From sequence record KU686213.1: DNA of 64,000 nt. One strand, written 5' to 3'. The translations under genes and the position numbers were made by a program. The notes beneath the pieces are model-generated. The model saw only the letters and a program-made list of their open reading frames with translations, ran no database searches and was not told the DNA's origin. Shown here piece by piece: positions 1,774-18,715 of this stretch (position 1 is the first letter of the stretch; every line of letters starts with the position of its first letter).

Positions 1774-2520
1774 GTGCCTAGAGTATTAACGCTAGAAGAT
1801 GTAAAACCACTACTTGGTAATTTGTCAAGGTCAAATTACTATCAGGTGCAGTTTGGTGGATTATCACCTGCATTGCTTGGAGCACTATCTGCAAGGGGCG
1901 TGGATCCATTTTTTGTATCTAATGATTCTGGGTTGCTTTGCTATCAAGCACAGCTTCCAGGATCTTCATTAGCTAGAACAGAATCTACAAACTTTACTGG
2001 TATTACAGAAAACTTTGCCCATAGGAAAGTATTTACTCCATTGAGCTTAGACTTTTACTGTGATGATAGATATAGATCTCTAAAGTTCTTAGAGCACTGG
2101 ATGGAATATGCCGTCAGTGGTAATGGGCTTAGTGGATATGCTGACAGTAACTACACATATAGGATGCAATATCCTAACGATCCTCTAACTGGGTATAAGT
2201 GTAGTGGTTCTAAAATATATAAGTTTGAAGCCAATGTGAGTAGGATTATTGAATACTCTTTTATTGGATTATTTCCGATTAACTTATCATCAACTCAAGT
2301 TAGATATGGTGCAGATGGTGAACTCACCAGAGTCAGTTGTCAGTTTGGATATACGAGATATATTGCTGGATCTGTATTGTCTATAGATGAGGCTAGAGGT
2401 TTCTCGAATAATTTACAGTCTGGTCTAACTAATATTACGGGCAACATTAATACCGTAATAGATACTGTAGATAGACTTAGAGGAACAGCTGCAAACGTAC
2501 TAGATCTATTCACCAACTAA
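1774..2520 (+). CDS. gp54: Baseplate tail-tube initiator (tube-like fold)
   Basis: gp19/gp54-like motifs (LPGSSL, LDFYCD, FLEHWMEY, LFPINLS); GTG start; upstream of gp48. Confidence 0.65.
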   Translation: MPRVLTLEDVKPLLGNLSRSNYYQVQFGGLSPALLGALSARGVDPFFVSNDSGLLCYQAQLPGSSLARTESTNFTGITENFAHRKVFTPLSLDFYCDDRYRSLKFLEHWMEYAVSGNGLSGYADSNYTYRMQYPNDPLTGYKCSGSKIYKFEANVSRIIEYSFIGLFPINLSSTQVRYGADGELTRVSCQFGYTRYIAGSVLSIDEARGFSNNLQSGLTNITGNINTVIDTVDRLRGTAANVLDLFTN

Positions 2521-2528: not shown

Positions 2529-3467
2529 ATGGCTAAATCATCCCCCAAACCAAGCTTACAATACCCCACCAATATTGCTAATGGCAATAATGACTACTTT
2601 CATTTGCAAATTTTTGAATATAAACCACTGGGTCTTGGTGGGGGTGGTGATAATATATTTGATGTTCCGTCAAGTCAAGCTCAAAGACCTAAAGTAGACA
2701 AAGAAACTAGTGGTGATAACCAGTCATACTTAGGTCAAATTATATTGCCTATGCCAGACAACATTGGTGATAATAACTCAGTTTCTTGGGACACTGATAC
2801 ATTAAACTCATTGACCATTGCCGGTGCAGGTACGCTCAGTGATGCTATATCAAAATTAAATTTGAATAATCCTGATCCAGGAGGGGCTTTAGATACAGTA
2901 AAAGATAGTGCATCCAAATTTTTAGATGCACTAAAAGATATTGACGTAAGAGGTAGTTTAAAAAATGCGTTAATAACTAGTGCCATAACTGGGGGAAATG
3001 TTGATCCAAACTCAATAATTAGTAGAACAACTGGACAAGTATTAAATCCAAACTTAGAGCTTCTATTTAAGGGAGTTATTTTGAGACAGTTTAACTATAG
3101 CTTTACACTAACACCAAGAACCAGTGAAGAGGGAACTCAGATTAAGGGTATCATAAATACTCTTAAGAAAAGAATGTCAGCAAAAAATACCACAGGTGCT
3201 GCTGCTGGTATATTCATTAAGGCACCTGATGTGTTCCAGCCAAGATTCATGCAAGGTCAAAAACCACATCCATTTTTATATAGTATAAGGCAGTGTGCTT
3301 TAGTGTCTATGAATGTTAATTATGATGGCGCAGGAATATATGCAACATATGGAGACGGCACACCAGTTAAAATGTCTTTACAGATGTCATTTAGAGAATT
3401 GAGTCCGTTATACTCTGAAGACTATAAAGATGGTTTACCCGGTCCAGATGAAGGAGTTGGATTCTAA
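2529..3467 (+). CDS. gp48: Baseplate tail-tube cap
   Basis: IILPMP, NPNLELLFKG..LRQFNYSF, DGTPV...SFREL motifs. Confidence 0.9.
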   Translation: MAKSSPKPSLQYPTNIANGNNDYFHLQIFEYKPLGLGGGGDNIFDVPSSQAQRPKVDKETSGDNQSYLGQIILPMPDNIGDNNSVSWDTDTLNSLTIAGAGTLSDAISKLNLNNPDPGGALDTVKDSASKFLDALKDIDVRGSLKNALITSAITGGNVDPNSIISRTTGQVLNPNLELLFKGVILRQFNYSFTLTPRTSEEGTQIKGIINTLKKRMSAKNTTGAAAGIFIKAPDVFQPRFMQGQKPHPFLYSIRQCALVSMNVNYDGAGIYATYGDGTPVKMSLQMSFRELSPLYSEDYKDGLPGPDEGVGF

Positions 3468-4117
3468 TGACTTATTTCAGACAGCTGCCGAATATTGAAT
3501 ATCAAAACTTCCTAAATGATCGCACAGGATCACAGGACTATATTTTGATGAAGAATATTTTCCTTAGGGGAAAATTGAGAGAAGACCTAGAAAGTAATTT
3601 TACAGTATTTCAGAAGTATAGTATCAAAGGTGATGAAAGACCTGATGAGATTGCTTATGATATATACGGATCATCTCAATATGACTGGGTTGTTCTAATT
3701 ACTGCTAGAATCATTACTTATCAAAATGACTACCCATTAACGAGTCAAGAACTCTATGATTATACCTTAAATAAGTATGGTGTTGAGGGTATGAATGCTA
3801 TCAATCACTATGAGAGTGTTGAGGTTAGAGATAGATTGGATAGGTTGGTATATCCAGCAGGTATCGTTGTAGCTAAAGATTTTACTATACCCAATCCAGA
3901 TACCCCAACATCATTTATCAGCCCTGTAGTTGGTGTTAGTAACTTTGAATATGAGACAAATAAGAATGATAGAAAGCGTAATATCACTATTCTAAGACCT
4001 CTATACTTAAATCAATTCTTGAATGATATGAGAGAAATCTCTAAGTATGGATTTAACTCAGAATATATTAATTCAACTACGATTAGAGCGGAGAATAGCA
4101 AGACTAAGAGCCCCTAA
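3467..4117 (+). CDS. gp53: Baseplate wedge subunit
   Basis: YFRQLP start, ERPDEIAYDIYG...DWVVL, NFEYE..KND.KRNI motifs. Confidence 0.92.
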   Translation: MTYFRQLPNIEYQNFLNDRTGSQDYILMKNIFLRGKLREDLESNFTVFQKYSIKGDERPDEIAYDIYGSSQYDWVVLITARIITYQNDYPLTSQELYDYTLNKYGVEGMNAINHYESVEVRDRLDRLVYPAGIVVAKDFTIPNPDTPTSFISPVVGVSNFEYETNKNDRKRNITILRPLYLNQFLNDMREISKYGFNSEYINSTTIRAENSKTKSP

Positions 4118-4159: not shown

Positions 4160-4870
4160 ATGGCGCTTCCTAAGATTGCCAAAGTGACTCACGAGACTAT
4201 TATTCCCTCAACTGGGAAGAAGATTAAGTTTCGTCCGTTTCTTGTGAAAGAGGAAAAGGTACTTATTTTAGCTCGCGAGTCTAACGACCAAAACGAGATG
4301 GTTAAGGGTATCATTGATGTAATCAATGCTTGCGTTATGACGAAAGGATTTTCTACTGAAAATCTATCCACTTTTGATATTGAATATATTTTCCTTAGTA
4401 TTAGGGGTAAGTCTATTGGGGAAGATGTTGAAGTTGTTGTTACTTGCCCTGATGATGGAGTGACTAGAGTCAATCATACTATTTTCTTGGATGAGGTAAA
4501 AGTCATCTTTGATGATGAACACTCAATGCAAGTTAAGATTGATGATACATATTCTGTTCTGATGAAGTATCCTAGTATTGAAGCTGTTATGGCTGCTGAT
4601 TCTGAGAATGTAAGTGTTACTGATAGTCTAGAACTTATTGCATCTTGCATAGATCAGATTTATTCTGAGGAGGACTCCTGGTCTTCTAGTGATAGTACTA
4701 CAGCAGAATTGGTCGAATGGGTTGAAGAACTTGAACCAAAGCAATTTGAGGGAATTGAGAAGTTCTTTACTACAATGCCTAAACTAAGTCATACCATTCA
4801 GGTTACTAACCCAGAAACTAAGGTGACTAGTGATGTTGTACTTGAGGGGCTAGGATCTTTTTTCGCGTAA
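4160..4870 (+). CDS. gp26: Baseplate hub assembly protein
   Basis: MALPKI, FRPFLVKEEKVL, FDIEYIFLxIRGKSIGE, FFTTMPKL motifs. Confidence 0.92.
   Translation: MALPKIAKVTHETIIPSTGKKIKFRPFLVKEEKVLILARESNDQNEMVKGIIDVINACVMTKGFSTENLSTFDIEYIFLSIRGKSIGEDVEVVVTCPDDGVTRVNHTIFLDEVKVIFDDEHSMQVKIDDTYSVLMKYPSIEAVMAADSENVSVTDSLELIASCIDQIYSEEDSWSSSDSTTAELVEWVEELEPKQFEGIEKFFTTMPKLSHTIQVTNPETKVTSDVVLEGLGSFFA
4858..4864 (+). other. Candidate -1 ribosomal frameshift site T TTT TTC
   Basis: X XXY YYZ heptamer phased to gp26 codons; the -1 frame is open into the gp51 ATG at 4873. Confidence 0.55.
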
Positions 4871-4872
4871 GT

Positions 4873-5052
4873 ATGGCTCACGAAGACCTTGAGTCATACT
4901 ATAAAACAAACTTTGCTCTAATACAACATCATAAATACAGTTTAAGTGATATTGAAAATCTTATCCCTTGGGAAAGAGATATATACATTACACTACTTAA
5001 AAACTGGATTGAAGAAGAAGAGCAACGCATAGCACAACAACAGCAGCGCTAA
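4873..5052 (+). CDS. gp51: Baseplate hub assembly catalyst (59 aa, absent from ORF track)
   Basis: Translates MAHEDLESYYKTNFALIQHHKYSLSDIENLIPWERDIYITLL..., typical of this family. Confidence 0.85.
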   Translation: MAHEDLESYYKTNFALIQHHKYSLSDIENLIPWERDIYITLLKNWIEEEEQRIAQQQQR

Positions 5053-6896
5053 TGAACTTATTTGGAGCCGCCACTACGGGAGTTGATCCACAAACTGGAA
5101 CATACCTCTCCAAAGAACAAAGAGTCGCAATGTTCCGCGCATCTAGGGGACAGGGTGGCGGAACAGCTGGTGGCGGAAACAATTCTGCTGGGTCTCAAGT
5201 AACTCCAAAGACTGCTATTGTTGTAGCTAATAAGTTTTCTGAAATTACACAGACACTTAGTAATAACTATCAGACTGCTAGTGCTGGTGTTGCAGAGCAG
5301 GTTGTCGAAAATAGGGCACGTATTGAAAATCTTTATCGTATTGTATATGATAGAAGAAAAGAAGATTTAAAAAGAGAGAAGCAAGAAACTAGAAATACTT
5401 TAATTGGAGCTGAGAGGAGTAAGAGGGGACTTAAGGAGGGATTTGTAGAAGGCATCTCTTCCGCAGCAGCTGCAGCAGTAGCACCATTACAGAAAGCAGC
5501 AGCGGCAGTACAGAAGCCCATTATGTCCCTATGGGATAAAATAAGGAATGCTCTACTGTTATTGACTGCAGCTTGGGTTATTGATAATCTACCTGCAATC
5601 CTGAAGAAGTTTGATGAATTTTTTGGTAGTATAAAGAGCTTAAAGGATACATTGACAAAAGCTCTGGTTAATATCAGAGGTGTATTTGGTATATTTGATG
5701 GTATTATTAGGGGTATAGTACGTACAATTGGCGCAGTAATTAAAACTGCTTATAGAGTTGGTAAGGCTATTTTTCAGTCAGCATTTCGTTTAGGTAGAGC
5801 AGTATTTAATGCTATTAAAAAGGTAGTTGAGACCGTAGTTAGGACTATTTTTAAGGGTATTCGTGCTTTAGTGGGTGGTATAGGTAATGCTTATCGTGCC
5901 GCTAGGGGATTATTACCAGGTGGAAATAAGCCAACAACCCCAAAACTACCAGATAAACAGCCTAAAAATGTCTTCCAAAGGTTGTGGGGTAAGGTTACTA
6001 AAGCTGCTACAGGACTAAAAGAATTTGCTGGAAATCAATACGGCAAACTGAAAGAGGGTGCTGATAAATTTATGACGGGATTTAGTAATCTACGCTCCAA
6101 GGCAATGGAGAAACTGAATCCTTTAAAATCATATGCTACAAAGGAAGGTATTAAAGAGGGTAATACTGCTAGTAGGACAAAGGGTATACAGGACCTGTTG
6201 GGGAAGGTATTCGAGAAAGCGGGTATTGCAGGTAAGGGTATACTGAAAAATGCAGGTAAGATTGCAAAGAACTTATTAAGATTACCTGGTATTGGTCTTG
6301 CTGTTGACGTAATGCTCAATAAAGCAGGTGGGCAAGGGATGGGTGAGTCACTTATTAGAGGCTTGGCTTCTAGTATTGCTGGGATGGTTGGTATGAAAGC
6401 CGGTGCTGCTGTTGGTGCTGGTCTTGGTACAGTAATTCTTCCTGGTATTGGTACTGCTGCTGGTGGTATTTTAGGAGGTATTATAGGATCTATTCTTGCT
6501 GGCTCTGGTGGTGATGCTCTCGCTAAAGCAGGTATGGAGAGTGTTGGGATGGAAACCACATCTGATGCCGAGATGGTGGAGAATTATAAGCCAGTTGTAG
6601 AGTCTGTAATTGGTAGTGATAAGTCCAGTACCGCAGGACAGCCTAGTCCTGCTGCAGCCATCACTCCAAGCACTCCAAGCACACCAGATGGTATGCAAGT
6701 TCCCGAAGGCTCTAATACTACAAATAATGTTACTGTTGAGCAAATGCCCCCTATTATGGAAAATATAGAGAGAGAAAAGAAGGAAGTTATACCTGAACAA
6801 CCAGTTCCTACAATCTCTACTAGAGACCCTCAGACAGATCTTTATAGAGCTATGGCTAGTAAGAGCTATCAGCTTAATTTGGCGGGTACATTCTAA
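5052..6896 (+). CDS. Tape-measure-like tail protein
   Basis: Helical Ala/Lys-rich, Gly-zipper GAAVGAGLG..GGILGGIIG; directly follows gp26/gp51. Confidence 0.55.
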   Translation: MNLFGAATTGVDPQTGTYLSKEQRVAMFRASRGQGGGTAGGGNNSAGSQVTPKTAIVVANKFSEITQTLSNNYQTASAGVAEQVVENRARIENLYRIVYDRRKEDLKREKQETRNTLIGAERSKRGLKEGFVEGISSAAAAAVAPLQKAAAAVQKPIMSLWDKIRNALLLLTAAWVIDNLPAILKKFDEFFGSIKSLKDTLTKALVNIRGVFGIFDGIIRGIVRTIGAVIKTAYRVGKAIFQSAFRLGRAVFNAIKKVVETVVRTIFKGIRALVGGIGNAYRAARGLLPGGNKPTTPKLPDKQPKNVFQRLWGKVTKAATGLKEFAGNQYGKLKEGADKFMTGFSNLRSKAMEKLNPLKSYATKEGIKEGNTASRTKGIQDLLGKVFEKAGIAGKGILKNAGKIAKNLLRLPGIGLAVDVMLNKAGGQGMGESLIRGLASSIAGMVGMKAGAAVGAGLGTVILPGIGTAAGGILGGIIGSILAGSGGDALAKAGMESVGMETTSDAEMVENYKPVVESVIGSDKSSTAGQPSPAAAITPSTPSTPDGMQVPEGSNTTNNVTVEQMPPIMENIEREKKEVIPEQPVPTISTRDPQTDLYRAMASKSYQLNLAGTF

Positions 6897-8794
6897 TGGC
6901 TATACCACTTATTGCTGCTAAATCACTTAATATTGCTAAAACTCTTATTGCATCTAGTAAGAATGTAGCTAAAGGTGTATATTCTACAGCAGCTTCTACG
7001 GTAAACAGAACCGGCGAGAAGATTAAATCAACCAATGCAAAAATTACTGCAGAGAAAAAGAAGCAGGCAGATATTAATAGAAAAAAATCTGAGAATGAAT
7101 CTCGCGCAGCAAAAGAGAATAATGCAGAAAATACCAATAAGAAAAAGGGTGCCGTTCTTAGCTTAGTTGGTGTTGTTAAAAAATCTATAATGGGGTTTTG
7201 GAAAATAATTGGTGCTTGGCTTCTAGACAACTTGCCTAGAATTATTGAGGAAGTGCGAAAGTTTGTGAAAAAGATTAGGATTGTTGGTGCTGCTATTAAG
7301 AGAGCTGTTACTCTCGTGGGTAGTGTATTTTCTTCTATTGGTAAGATTGCTAAAGCTGTCGTAAAAAATATCCTAAACTTTGATTTTACTGATAAGTCGG
7401 GCGATATTAGAGAAGCTAGAGAAGAACTTGACGCCAGTGTCGATGGTATTGGATCATCTATAAGCGAGATTGGTACTGTTTGGGGTAGGGAAGAGGATGA
7501 GTTGGATTATATTTTGACCCAATTAACAAGTAATCAAAATCTTGAAAATATTCGTAAGAACATTCTTAGTGAGTTCCCCGAAGTCGAGAAAGGGACTAGT
7601 GCCGTTGGTGATGGTTCTTCTCCTTCTTCTGGTGGTGGATCCTCTAGGGGTGATGCACTATTCGATTTAATTGGTAGTGGTGAGGGTGATTACAACTCAG
7701 TCAATAGGGGTAATGCTGGAGATACTCCAGGTGGTGCCGAGGCTATTTTTGGGAAACCACTTACAGAGATGACTGTAGGTCAAGTTGCTAGTGCTCAACA
7801 GAGTGGTCAAGTATTTGCTGTAGGAAAATATCAGATTATCCCAGACACTATGGTGGAATTTTTAAGGAATAGTCCTGACATAAAACCCACTGATAAATTT
7901 GATTCAAGAACACAGGAGAAGTTTAAGGAGTATGTTATTAATGTAAAGAGACCTGCTATTGGTAAGTATCTTCGTGGTGAAAGTGATGATAGAGATGCTG
8001 CAGCACAGGCAGTTGCTAGGGAGTTTGCTTCCGTTGGTCTAACTAAGGCTGAAGCTGGTAGAGGTCGTGGTCAATCTCGCTATGCAGGTACTGGTAATAA
8101 TGCAGCTTCTATCAGTCCAGACCAGGTTGCTTCTGCATTGGATGCTGATAGATCTGCAACTCTATCTCCACCTCAACCACAGGCTCCCCAACCAGCTAAT
8201 GGGCAGACTCCTGCTCCAGGTAAACAAAATGCTGCATTAGCATCTAGTGCGGGTAGACTCAATAAGAGTAGACTTGATACTAGTAGATTTGGTCGTAATG
8301 GGTGCGTATTTGCAGTAAATCAGGCATATAAAGCAGCTGGTATGACACCTCCTTGGGGAACTACTAACTATGTCCCCGATGCTAGAGCTATGATGATTAA
8401 AAAGGGATATGTTCAAGTTGGCGTTAAGAATGCTCAACCTGGTGATATTGTTATTATGGCTGATAGAGGATCTCCTCCGTGGGTCCATATTGGCATTGTT
8501 TCAAATTCGGGCACAGTACTACACAATTCATCAACAAATCAGGCATTTACTAACAATGAATCATTTTCAAGTCTTATGAGAAGGTATGTTAAAATTGAAG
8601 TTTATAGAGCACCTTCAGTAATATCTAGAGAATCATCTAATGTAAGCAATGCTGTTAATGGTTCTAAGAATGGAAAAAATAACGTGAAGGCATTGAATGA
8701 TAGTATGACTATTGCTTCAAGAAGAACTGGCGGAACTCAAGTAGTTAATAACACAGTCGTCTTGAAGCAGGATCGTGTTGTTATGGTGAGCTAA
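6896..8794 (+). CDS. Tail/hub protein with lysozyme-like and NlpC/P60(CHAP)-like domains
   Basis: LIGSGEGDYNSVN...AVGKYQIIPDT (lysozyme-like); GCVFAV...PGDIVIM...HIGIV (Cys/His amidase-like). Confidence 0.7.
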   Translation: MAIPLIAAKSLNIAKTLIASSKNVAKGVYSTAASTVNRTGEKIKSTNAKITAEKKKQADINRKKSENESRAAKENNAENTNKKKGAVLSLVGVVKKSIMGFWKIIGAWLLDNLPRIIEEVRKFVKKIRIVGAAIKRAVTLVGSVFSSIGKIAKAVVKNILNFDFTDKSGDIREAREELDASVDGIGSSISEIGTVWGREEDELDYILTQLTSNQNLENIRKNILSEFPEVEKGTSAVGDGSSPSSGGGSSRGDALFDLIGSGEGDYNSVNRGNAGDTPGGAEAIFGKPLTEMTVGQVASAQQSGQVFAVGKYQIIPDTMVEFLRNSPDIKPTDKFDSRTQEKFKEYVINVKRPAIGKYLRGESDDRDAAAQAVAREFASVGLTKAEAGRGRGQSRYAGTGNNAASISPDQVASALDADRSATLSPPQPQAPQPANGQTPAPGKQNAALASSAGRLNKSRLDTSRFGRNGCVFAVNQAYKAAGMTPPWGTTNYVPDARAMMIKKGYVQVGVKNAQPGDIVIMADRGSPPWVHIGIVSNSGTVLHNSSTNQAFTNNESFSSLMRRYVKIEVYRAPSVISRESSNVSNAVNGSKNGKNNVKALNDSMTIASRRTGGTQVVNNTVVLKQDRVVMVS

Positions 8795-15886: not shown

Positions 15887-18715
15887 ATGACTTACGAGAA
15901 CAAAAAAATCCCAGCTAACGGTTCTTTACTAGTTACCAGTAATGGTGCCGTCTCATATGCAGGCGCACCAACTGGAGACAAGAACCAAATTGTTACCTTT
16001 GATAAATTAAGGGCTGAACTACAAGCAACTAACTTGGGAGAACTTTTGTCTCTGGCTGGTATTTCAAGTGGTGGTGGTACTGGTGTAGCTTTGACTGTGA
16101 GAGAATCACAAGGGCTCGGCGGTACTGTTGGTAATAGTCTTGCTAATATCAATACTCTTACCTTTGACCAAAATACTGGTTTTAATGTAGAAGAGACTGG
16201 TGAAGATGGTGAGGCATTCATTAGGTTGGGTTCAGCATTCGCACCTTGGTTTGTAGCTGATTCCGAGACATTGAGACCAGAAGGTGAGGAATCAATTGCA
16301 TTCCTAACTGGTCCAGGTATTGCTATTACCACAAAAACTACGCGGACAGGTATTGGTACAACATTATCAAAAGCCATTATCTTTACTGGTACTTCTGCAT
16401 TTGCCCCTTGGCTTGTAGATGGGCAAGATACACTAACTCCAGATGGTCAAGAGCCCATTAAGTTTGTTGGTATAGGTATTACTATCCTCACTGGTGCTAC
16501 GGGTATTGGTAGCACTGAAGCCGAAGCTATTGGTATTGGTAGCACTGATGTAGTCAAAACTATTACATTCATTGGAGAAAAGGGTGCCCCTGGTGAGGGG
16601 GGCGGATCTACTGGTGCTACTGGTGTATTTGGATCTACTGGAGCAACTGGTCCTACGGGAGCTACTGGAAGTGATGGTGCTACTGGACCTATTGGTTCAA
16701 CAGGTGCTACAGGAATACCTGGGGCTGATGGTTCTACGGGTGTGGAGGGTCCCATTGGCGCTACTGGAGCCACGGGTCCTCAAGGTTCCACAGGAGCCAC
16801 TGGACCAATTGGGGCTACTGGATTTAGAGGATTTATTGGGTCTACAGGTGCTACTGGACTACAAGGAACGACTGGACCTATTGGCTCCACTGGTGCTACT
16901 GGCGTATTTGGATCTACTGGGGCAACTGGTCCTGTAGGAGCCACGGGGATAAGTGTAACTGGCTCAACTGGTGCTACTGGACCCCAAGGTTCTACGGGTA
17001 TATTTGGTTCTACTGGTGCTACTGGTGTATTTGGTTCTACTGGGGCAACTGGTCCTTCTGGTCCAACGGGTGCTACTGGTGTATTTGGTGCTACTGGTTC
17101 TACTGGTGTAGCAGGTGCTACGGGTTCTCTTGGCGCTACTGGAGCAACAGGAGTTCTTGGTTCCACTGGCGCTACTGGTATAGATGGATCAACAGGTGCT
17201 ACTGGCTCTCTCGGTGCTACTGGAGCAACAGGTGTTCTTGGATCCACTGGGGCAACAGGTCCTCAAGGTGCTACTGGTTCTCTTGGTGCGACTGGTGCAA
17301 CGGGTGTTCTTGGATCTACAGGAGCTACTGGTTCTCAAGGTGCTACTGGTTCTCTTGGCGCTACTGGACCCATAGGTTCTACAGGAGCTACTGGAATTGG
17401 AGCTACAGGATCCACAGGAGTTCCTGGTGCTACAGGTTCCACAGGACCCATAGGTTCCACAGGAGCTACTGGTATAGGTGCTACGGGAGCCACGGGAGTT
17501 CCTGGTGCTACAGGTGCTACTGGTCTTCTAGGTTCCACAGGAGCTACTGGTATCGGAGCCACTGGTCCTACAGGAGCTACTGGTCCTACTGGTTCTACTG
17601 GTTCTACGGGTGCTGGTACGACAGGCGCTACTGGTGTTGCGGGTGCTACTGGGGCTACTGGAGCTACTGGAATGTTGGGTTCCACAGGAGCCACTGGTAT
17701 TGGAGCTACTGGACCCATTGGATCTACTGGTGCTACTGGTCCTCTTGGAACAACTGGTGCTACAGGTGTAGGTTCTACTGGTGCTACTGGACTTGCGGGA
17801 TCCACTGGAATTGATGGTGCTACTGGTCCTCTTGGGTCCACTGGTGCTACTGGTCCTGTTGGTGCTACTGGTATTCCTGGTCCTCCTGGTCCTGGTGGTG
17901 GAGATCCTGGTCCCCCAGGTCCTGGTGGCGGTGCTACTGGTGCTACAGGTCCCGCAGGAGCTACGGGTATTCAGGGGGCTACTGGTTTAGGTGCTACTGG
18001 TGCTACTGGCGTATTTGATAATACTAGTGATATCAATACTAGTGGGAACATTACTGCTGCTACTATCACTGCTACTGTTAAGTTTGATGGTGATCTAGAA
18101 GGTAATGCTGATACTGCTACGGTATCAACTAACTCTAATATTATTACCGCTACTGGCTCTAACGAGCATAGGGTGATTATCGTTGATGGTGATACAGGAG
18201 ATCTTGGATTGGAGAGTGATAGTAATCTCACATTCAATCCAAATACAAATACTCTCACCGCTGGTAGTTTCGTTGGCGGTGGTGTTATTTCTGGCTTCGT
18301 ACAGAACAGCACTACTACAAGAGTTCAAACTAGTAGTACTAACTGGGCAAGTACTACATTATCTGCCACCATCAATAAAAAAACTGTAGATAGTTCTATT
18401 CTTATTATGGTGAATCAGAATTACTTGATCAGTAACGTTATTGGTAGTTTTAGGATTATGAGGGGGACAACTCCAATTTTCGCTGTTGATGGTGATATTG
18501 GTTTAATTAACAATACAACTGGAAATCCAATTGTTTCAACAACAGCAGTTGCTTCTAGGTGGGCAGCTACCTTTATCGACACAACTCTAACTTCTGGTAA
18601 TATCACATACTCAACAGAGTTTAGAAAGAGTTCTGGCGGTAGTGGAGCAACAGAATACCTTGTTGTTCAAAGTGCGAATATTGAGAGTTTGATTCAGGTG
18701 ATTGAAATCTCATAG
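15887..18715 (+). CDS. Collagen-like fibre protein 2
   Basis: Long (GATGxx)/(GSTGAT) block and a beta-rich C-terminal domain. Confidence 0.85.

What the first reader, a model, noticed from the sequence alone, without database searches (positions are those of the whole stretch)
4850..5052. Probable -1 programmed frameshift fusing gp26 to gp51
Seen: gp26 ends GGA TCT TTT TTC GCG TAA, which contains an in-phase T TTT TTC heptamer (4858-4864). The -1 frame reads TTT TTT CGC GTA AGT ATG GCT CAC, continuing without a stop into the gp51 ATG (4873). Both genes sit directly before the tape-measure-like gene. Known: lambda gpG/gpGT-type tail chaperones use this architecture and position. Inference: this phage makes gp26 and a gp26-51 fusion, making them G/GT equivalents in a T4-like virus, where I do not recall this being described.
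Basis: partly seen in the sequence, partly recalled or inferred. Interest (0 to 1): 0.7.

Follow-up and report, generated by a model that had tools for sequence, protein, structure and literature searches.

The report
Tail chaperone frameshift in cyanophage S-CAM7
Phage S-CAM7 almost certainly makes a short and a long tail-assembly chaperone from one gene pair by a programmed -1 ribosomal slip, but this arrangement was already described for T4-like phages in 2022.

Summary
The window is Synechococcus phage S-CAM7. gp26 (4160-4870) ends with an in-phase T_TTT_TTC (4858-4864). The 59-codon "gp51" ORF (4873-5052) lies in the -1 frame, directly before a tape-measure-like gene.

Comparative evidence for a programmed -1 frameshift is strong:
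- All 79 related IMG/VR loci keep the heptamer at the same place and phase.
- Of 138 conserved degenerate codon columns in gp26, only its two Phe codons never vary.
- The same signal occurs in distant T4-like phages of Pseudomonas, Aeromonas, Vibrio, Ralstonia, Xanthomonas, rhizobia and Nitratidesulfovibrio.
- Several relatives have no usable start codon for the downstream ORF.
- T4 gp51, a separate divergent gene, is colinear with gp26 plus the -1 ORF. T4-type gp26 genes encode the same Phe-Phe as TTC TTT, which is not slippery.
- A hairpin is predicted 5 nt downstream.

Vladimirov, Gautam and Davidson (Virology 2022) identified gp26/gp51 as the tail assembly chaperones of T4-like phages, with frameshifting in some groups. 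I know that paper only through two citing papers and my own memory. No protein-level evidence exists here. The practical value is correcting an annotation.

The parts
4160..4870 (+). gp26 = short tail assembly chaperone (TAC-N), 236 aa
   Evidence: Pfam PF12322 T4_baseplate at 6e-67 and phrog_150 at 7e-72. Homologues of 236 aa cover the whole ORF. The AlphaFold2 model has pLDDT 96. GenBank starts this CDS at 4298, which looks too short.
4858..4864 (+). slippery heptamer T_TTT_TTC, in phase with gp26
   Evidence: It is identical in sequence, phase and distance to the stop in 79/79 IMG/VR loci. Its two Phe codons are the only invariant codons among 138 conserved degenerate columns. T_TTT_TTY/G is present in 14 more distant phages.
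4868..4870 (+). gp26 (zero-frame) stop codon TAA, one codon (3 nt) after the heptamer's last base
   Evidence: The stop begins 10 nt after the heptamer start in 79/79 loci.
4870..4900 (+). predicted 11-bp hairpin 5 nt after the heptamer; a candidate frameshift stimulator that contains the gp51 ATG in its 5' arm
   Evidence: -14.5 kcal/mol, z -3.98, 0/200 shuffles fold as well. 90% of cells are paired in 57 distinct relatives against 20-49% in slid controls, and 2 pairs show compensatory changes. RNAalifold did not recover it on the 150-nt alignment.
4846..5052 (+). -1 frame ORF; from 4858 onward it is the C-terminal extension of the long chaperone (TAC-C). It is annotated as the 59-aa 'gp51' from ATG 4873
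   Evidence: phrog_634 at 1e-29, and it also matches the C-terminal positions 239-277 of phrog_150. BLASTP to T4 gp51 residues 207-244 gives 2e-5.
5052..6896 (+). tape-measure-like protein, 614 aa; the presumed client of the chaperones
   Evidence: phrog_3405 plus weaker hits to five tape-measure PHROG families, best 2e-10. There is no Pfam or NCBIfam hit.
6896..8794 (+). hub protein (gpD-like in GenBank) with a C-terminal Amidase_5/CHAP domain; a neighbour that completes the chaperone / tape measure / hub order

Best explanation
gp26 and 'gp51' of S-CAM7 are one recoded gene pair that encodes the two tail assembly chaperones. Most ribosomes translate gp26 to its stop and make the 236-aa short form. 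A minority slip back one base on U_UUU_UUC. Both tRNA-Phe can re-pair perfectly there. The slip is probably helped by the hairpin 5 nt downstream. These ribosomes continue in the -1 frame to 5052 and make a long form of about 297 aa, which has the same domain order as T4 gp51. By analogy with lambda gpG/gpGT and with T4 gp26/gp51 genetics, both forms would act on the tape-measure-like protein encoded next and would be absent from the finished virion. Shown by sequence: the register, the heptamer, their conservation and the homology to T4 gp51. Inferred: the slip itself, its frequency, the role of the hairpin and the chaperone function.
For:: heptamer and frames; 79/79 IMG/VR loci (gp26 identity 49-82%) have TTTTTTC in phase, 10 nt before the stop, with a 56-64 codon -1 ORF after it. 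In 4 loci a -1-frame stop abuts the heptamer, so the shift can only occur on it. In 5 loci the first possible start codon lies 15-16 codons further downstream than the usual ATG, inside conserved sequence; in 72 distinct gp26 CDS, only the two heptamer Phe codons are invariant among 138 conserved degenerate columns. One of them is TTC, although C is only 6% of third positions. The preceding codon always ends in T across five different codons; the same signal and a phrog_634-homologous -1 ORF occur in P-SSM2, S-CRM01, pf16, SRB7757, Astolliot, Assk, phiAS5, CZ01, RSP15, phiM9, Atu_ph04 and X1. SRB7757 has no ATG/GTG/TTG anywhere in that ORF, and in Assk the first is at codon 33. T4 gene 51 is divergent from gene 26. 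Its residues 1-201 are a full gp26-family domain (PF12322, 8e-55), and residues 207-244 align with the S-CAM7 -1 ORF. T4, EcS1 and KPV15, which have a separate gp51, encode the Phe-Phe as TTC TTT, which is not slippery; a downstream hairpin; the literature describes this for T4-like phages.
Against: No protein, ribosome-profiling or RNA data were available, so the slip is inferred. 74 of 79 cyanophage loci keep an ATG 2 nt after the gp26 stop, so separate translation of the 59-aa ORF cannot be excluded as an additional route. Covariation in the hairpin is thin: 2 pairs, with one pair unpaired in 26 of 57 sequences. RNAalifold did not find it, and SRB7757 and phiM9 show no convincing structure. 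Vibrio phage D503 has the -1 ORF but no perfect heptamer. The structural link to a known chaperone is not significant (HK97 chaperone 2ob9 is the top PDB hit, but E = 0.53).
Confidence: 0.85

Rival explanations
1. Two separate proteins, as annotated in GenBank: gp51 is translated on its own from ATG 4873 by termination-reinitiation after the gp26 stop, and no fusion is made.
For: The ATG lies 2 nt after the TAA, and an ATG is kept at that place in 74/79 related loci. Several distant phages have an ATG overlapping or adjacent to the gp26 stop. GenBank records annotate two CDS.
Against: This does not explain the frozen synonymous sites of the heptamer. It does not explain relatives with no start codon (L077-L081, SRB7757, Assk, phiAS5, X1, Astolliot), where homology to the gp51 family begins at the heptamer. 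It does not explain T4 gp51 being a colinear fusion. The residue at the ATG position is Leu or Ile in some relatives, as expected for an internal hydrophobic residue. This route may still coexist with frameshifting.
Confidence: 0.05
2. The same long protein is made, but by transcriptional slippage: RNA polymerase changes the length of the U-run in a fraction of transcripts, rather than the ribosome slipping.
For: The signal is a homopolymer, T6 here and T7 in pf16, RSP15 and Atu_ph04. One low-coverage metagenome contig (L098) carries the two ORFs in a single frame, and its T-run differs in length from the run in all other loci.
Against: From general knowledge, runs of 6 are short for efficient polymerase slippage. 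The run is always in the exact X_XXY_YYZ phase (79/79). A hairpin sits at the spacing typical of ribosomal -1 signals. phiM9 has T_TTT_TTG. Sequence alone cannot fully separate the two mechanisms.
Confidence: 0.08
3. The heptamer is a by-product of a conserved Phe-Phe motif, and the -1 ORF is just a neighbouring gene; there is no recoding.
For: Phe-Phe is conserved at the protein level even in T4 gp26. TTTTTTC is not over-represented in the window.
Against: Every other conserved Phe column in gp26 uses both TTT and TTC, and only these two are fixed. The preceding codon always ends in T whatever its amino acid. Phages that do not need the shift encode the same Phe-Phe as TTC TTT.
Confidence: 0.02

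Closest known systems
TAC-N / TAC-NC genes of T4-like phages (Vladimirov, Gautam & Davidson, Virology 2022, doi 10.1016/j.virol.2021.11.003)
   Same: As reported by citing papers, T4-like phages have a short chaperone gene with a poly-T -1 frameshift signal, while T4 itself carries the short and the fused long form as two genes. The S-CAM7 locus fits this description in every tested respect.
   Different: I could not read the paper, so I cannot say whether S-CAM7 or Kyanoviridae were among the groups examined. The GenBank record of S-CAM7 still annotates two unrelated CDS.
T4 gp26 and gp51 (hub assembly chaperones)
   Same: S-CAM7 gp26 and both T4 proteins carry the PF12322 domain. The S-CAM7 -1 ORF aligns with the C-terminal tail of T4 gp51. 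T4 gp51 is needed for assembly but is absent from the particle (PMC3004832).
   Different: In T4 the long form is a separate, divergently transcribed paralogue. gp26 there has no slippery heptamer and is followed by gene 25.
Lambda gpG/gpGT and P2 gpE/gpE+E' tail assembly chaperones
   Same: Two overlapping ORFs lie just before the tape-measure gene. The second is in the -1 frame, and a heptamer near the end of the first gives a short major and a long minor product (general knowledge). Position and register were tested here.
   Different: No sequence similarity was found. The only structural echo is a non-significant top hit to the HK97 chaperone 2ob9. From general knowledge, the N domain here is larger than lambda gpG and the slippery sequence differs.
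E. coli dnaX -1 frameshift signal
   Same: A homopolymeric heptamer is followed after a short spacer by a stable hairpin (general knowledge for dnaX; here).
   Different: In dnaX the shifted frame ends almost at once and gives a shorter protein; here it adds about 60 residues. The upstream GAGGG at 4845-4849 resembles the dnaX Shine-Dalgarno-like stimulator. However, it encodes a conserved Glu-Gly, so no nucleotide-level constraint could be shown.

Membership tests
Frameshifted tail assembly chaperone pair (lambda G/GT type; TAC-N/TAC-NC) | Two consecutive ORFs immediately upstream of the tape-measure gene | tested here: met
   4160-4870 and 4873-5052 are followed at 5052 by a 614-aa ORF that hits tape-measure PHROGs.
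Frameshifted tail assembly chaperone pair (lambda G/GT type; TAC-N/TAC-NC) | Second ORF in the -1 frame, with an in-phase X_XXY_YYZ heptamer inside the overlap | tested here: met
   T_TTT_TTC at 4858-4864; the -1 frame is open from 4846.
Frameshifted tail assembly chaperone pair (lambda G/GT type; TAC-N/TAC-NC) | Heptamer and register conserved in relatives beyond what the protein sequence requires | tested here: met
   79/79 loci; the only invariant codons among 138 columns; 14 more distant phages.
Frameshifted tail assembly chaperone pair (lambda G/GT type; TAC-N/TAC-NC) | Downstream ORF not independently translatable in at least some members | tested here: met
   There is no early start codon in L077-L081, SRB7757, Assk, phiAS5, X1 or Astolliot, while homology starts at the heptamer. 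S-CAM7 itself does have an ATG.
Frameshifted tail assembly chaperone pair (lambda G/GT type; TAC-N/TAC-NC) | Fold related to solved tail assembly chaperones | tested here: inconclusive
   The top PDB hit of the pLDDT-96 model is the HK97 tail assembly chaperone 2ob9_B, but with E = 0.53 and 66 aligned columns. There was no sequence hit in the PDB.
Frameshifted tail assembly chaperone pair (lambda G/GT type; TAC-N/TAC-NC) | Long fusion product actually made at a low ratio; both forms bind the tape measure and are absent from virions | not testable with these tools
   No expression or interaction data were available. Only the T4 homologue gp51 is reported as absent from particles.
T4 gp26/gp51 family (Pfam PF12322 plus gp51 C-terminal tail) | Full-length PF12322 domain | tested here: met
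   6.2e-67, residues 10-236.
T4 gp26/gp51 family (Pfam PF12322 plus gp51 C-terminal tail) | gp51-type C-terminal segment following the PF12322 domain | tested here: met
   The -1 ORF hits phrog_634 at 1e-29 and aligns with T4 gp51 residues 207-244. T4 gp51 spans phrog_150 positions 13-280, while gp26 stops at position 235. In S-CAM7 the two parts lie in different frames.

The most novel reading that the evidence does not exclude
In cyanophages the locus may give three products rather than two: the short chaperone, the frameshifted long chaperone, and a free 59-aa C-terminal peptide. The peptide would be made by reinitiation at the conserved ATG, which sits 2 nt after the gp26 stop and inside the 5' arm of the hairpin. 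In that case the hairpin would both stimulate the slip and gate reinitiation.
Probability: 0.12. Interest if true: 0.45.

Novelty: already known. Interest (0 to 1): 0.25.

Why it matters
The result corrects the annotation of S-CAM7 and of hundreds of cyanophage and other T4-like genomes, which list a "baseplate hub subunit" and a tiny "hub assembly catalyst" as separate genes. It explains the old puzzle, noted by Sullivan et al. 2010 (PMC3037559), that cyanophage gp51 is only about 20% of the length of T4 gp51. It also places the T4 hub "catalyst" within the general tail assembly chaperone scheme of long-tailed phages. The concept itself was published in 2022. The contribution here is independent comparative support, a pinned shift site and a candidate stimulatory hairpin.

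Tried and rejected
- **Literature:** searches for gp26/gp51 with "frameshift", "paralog" or "hub assembly catalyst" found nothing relevant. The key paper surfaced only through the PRFect paper, and it is not held in the library.
- **Annotation libraries:** Pfam and NCBIfam gave nothing for the 59-aa ORF or the tape-measure-like ORF.
- **Rfam:** only chance-level microRNA-shaped hits on the hairpin.
- **RNAalifold:** on the 150-nt alignment it returned a negligible structure that pairs the heptamer itself (-0.96 kcal/mol). I rejected that structure in favour of the hairpin found by single-sequence folding.
- **PDB sequence search** with gp26: no relatives.
- **BFVD fold search:** returned only gp26-family models and no named tail assembly chaperone.
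- **Upstream GAGGG as a Shine-Dalgarno-like stimulator:** considered but left open. It encodes a conserved Glu-Gly, and the Gly third position varies freely.
- **Second "hit" of the window-wide heptamer screen:** it lies antisense to a 942-aa gene and was dismissed.

Full report
**Observation.** The window is the first 64 kb of Synechococcus phage S-CAM7 (KU686213.1). One search shows gp26 ending ...GGA TCT TTT TTC GCG TAA, with the stop at 4868-4870. T_TTT_TTC therefore occupies 4858-4864 in the X_XXY_YYZ phase. The ORF 4873-5052 is in the -1 frame relative to 4160-4870. The -1 frame is closed by TGA at 4843-4845, so any shift must occur between 4846 and the stop. The motif alone is unremarkable, with 6 copies on both strands against 10 expected. 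Among 102 long stop-to-stop ORFs in the window, only this one and one antisense artefact combine an in-phase heptamer near the stop with a long open -1 frame.

**Genes and context.**
- The 236-aa ORF is a full-length member of the T4 gp26 family (PF12322, 6e-67; phrog_150).
- The 59-aa ORF hits phrog_634 ("baseplate hub assembly catalyst", 1e-29). It also hits the C-terminal positions 239-277 of the gp26 family profile phrog_150. That was the first hint that some family members carry both parts in one chain.
- Downstream come a 614-aa ORF with tape-measure PHROG hits and a hub protein with a CHAP/Amidase_5 domain.
- The resulting order of chaperone, extension, tape measure and hub is the one seen in other long-tailed phages.

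**Close and middle-distance relatives.** I fetched 80 IMG/VR loci with gp26 identity of 49-82%; 79 were usable.
- All 79 have TTTTTTC in phase, 10 nt before the stop, followed by a 56-64 codon -1 ORF homologous to gp51.
- In four loci a -1-frame stop abuts the heptamer, so the heptamer's own codons are the first sense codons of the -1 frame.
- In five loci the usual ATG is CTG or ATT. The next possible start lies 15-16 codons further downstream, inside conserved sequence.
- In 72 distinct gp26 coding sequences, 138 columns have a conserved degenerate amino acid. Only two of them use a single codon: Phe234 (TTT) and Phe235 (TTC). All eleven other conserved Phe columns use both codons. C is only 6% of third positions. 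The codon before the pair is AGT, TCT, AAT, GAT or GCT, always ending in T.
- This constraint acts on the nucleotides, not on the protein.

**Distant relatives and the natural control.**
- The same T_TTT_TTY/G sits 7-10 nt before the gp26 stop, with a 54-63 codon -1 ORF after it, in P-SSM2, S-CRM01, Pseudomonas phages pf16 and Astolliot, Nitratidesulfovibrio phage SRB7757, Aeromonas phages Assk and phiAS5, Vibrio phage CZ01, Ralstonia phage RSP15, Sinorhizobium phage phiM9, Agrobacterium phage Atu_ph04 and Xanthomonas phage X1. gp26 identity falls to about 23% in this set.
- I translated ten of these -1 ORFs in their own frame from the heptamer. All ten hit phrog_634, nine of them from residue 2 to 5.
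- SRB7757 has no ATG, GTG or TTG in that ORF at all. In Assk the first is at codon 33 of 58, and GenBank annotates no gene there.
- In T4, EcS1 and KPV15, gene 51 is a separate gene transcribed divergently from gene 26. There gp26 encodes the same Phe-Phe as TTC TTT, which breaks the run, and it is followed by gene 25. The slippery sequence is therefore absent exactly where it is not needed.

**T4 gp51 has the architecture of the predicted product.**
- T4 gp51 (249 aa) matches the whole PF12322 model over residues 1-201 (8e-55).
- It aligns with T4 gp26 and with S-CAM7 gp26.
- Its residues 207-244 align with residues 4-42 of the S-CAM7 59-aa ORF (2e-5).
- Against phrog_150, T4 gp51 spans positions 13-280 and T4 gp26 spans 14-235.
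- This explains why cyanophage gp51 is "only ~20% of the length" of T4 gp51 (PMC3037559).
- One database protein (P0021, 300 aa, from a 1.9-kb contig at 1.6x coverage) carries both parts in one ORF. Its T-run differs in length from the run in all other loci. I treat it as a probable sequencing artefact.

**RNA structure.**
- An 11-bp hairpin (4870-4900) starts 5 nt after the heptamer: -14.5 kcal/mol, z -3.98, 0 of 200 shuffles fold as well.
- In 57 distinct relatives, 90% of cells pair, against 20-49% in slid controls. Two pairs show compensatory changes, but one pair is unpaired in 26 sequences. The stem is also coding sequence.
- RNAalifold did not recover the hairpin.
- Distant phages often have a hairpin at a similar place (P-SSM2, pf16, Astolliot, RSP15). 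SRB7757 and phiM9 do not.
- I regard the hairpin as a plausible but unproven stimulator.
- Rfam has no matching family.

**Chaperone likeness.**
- The gp26 model is confident (pLDDT 96).
- Its best PDB match is the HK97 tail assembly chaperone, but the match is not significant (E 0.53).
- BFVD returns only gp26-family models.
- Membership of the lambda-type chaperone class therefore rests on position, recoding signal and the T4 genetics. T4 gp51 is required for hub assembly and is absent from particles. It does not rest on fold.

**What is known.**
- The PRFect paper states that some T4-like phages carry a short chaperone gene and a longer fused copy instead of frameshifting (PMC10885494).
- The phage Adele paper states that poly-T sequences are known -1 signals in TAC-N genes of T4-like phages (PMC12846349).
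- Both cite Vladimirov, Gautam and Davidson 2022.
- From memory, that paper's abstract says the frameshift is conserved in several T4-like groups while T4 uses genes 26 and 51. I could not open the paper.
- The phenomenon is therefore already described. S-CAM7 is an unannotated instance of it.

**Rivals.** Separate translation of gp51 from its ATG, transcriptional slippage on the T-run, and coincidence are weighed in the rival explanations. Only the first two survive, and only as possible minor or parallel routes.

**Verdict.** No expression evidence is available. The finding is not novel.

Noticed in passing
window 4160-4297: GenBank starts the gp26 CDS at 4298. The ORF from ATG 4160 is matched over its full 236 aa by homologues and by PF12322 from residue 10. 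The deposited start therefore appears to be 46 codons too short.
   Followed up: partly
window 3467-4117: The gp53 baseplate wedge ORF matches phrog_232 from residue 1 of the ORF that starts at 3467. GenBank starts it at 3548, possibly another truncated start.
   Followed up: no
window 1774-2520: This ORF is annotated 'hypothetical protein' but hits Phage_TTP_2 and phrog_45 tail tube. In its position beside gp48 it resembles the gp54-type tail tube initiator annotated in Vibrio phage CZ01.
   Followed up: no
window 6896-8794: The hub protein (gpD-like in GenBank) carries a C-terminal Amidase_5/CHAP peptidoglycan hydrolase domain. This is a tail-tip lysin of a different enzyme class from the T4 gp5 lysozyme.
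   Followed up: no
L089 3199-3399 (Vibrio phage D503, OZ195883.1): gp26 is followed by a 58-codon open -1 frame, but the Phe-Phe is replaced by CTT TTC. There is thus no perfect heptamer, and no tape-measure gene follows directly. How the long form is made there, if at all, is unexplained.
   Followed up: partly
L098 749-1651 (ENA contig, protein P0021): A single 300-aa ORF contains both the gp26 and the gp51 parts. The contig has about 1.6x coverage, and its T-run differs in length from all other loci. This is probably a homopolymer sequencing error, though a natural one-frame variant is not excluded.
   Followed up: partly
window 15892-16377 (- strand): This was the only other ORF in the window with an in-phase heptamer (TTTTTTG) near its stop and a long open -1 frame. 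It lies antisense to the 942-aa gene at 15887-18715, so it is almost certainly not a gene.
   Followed up: yes
L086 3244-3412 (Aeromonas phage Assk) and L084 (SRB7757): The gp51-homologous -1 ORF is not annotated at all in these records, because it has no usable start codon. Gene callers systematically miss or truncate this segment in T4-like genomes.
   Followed up: yes
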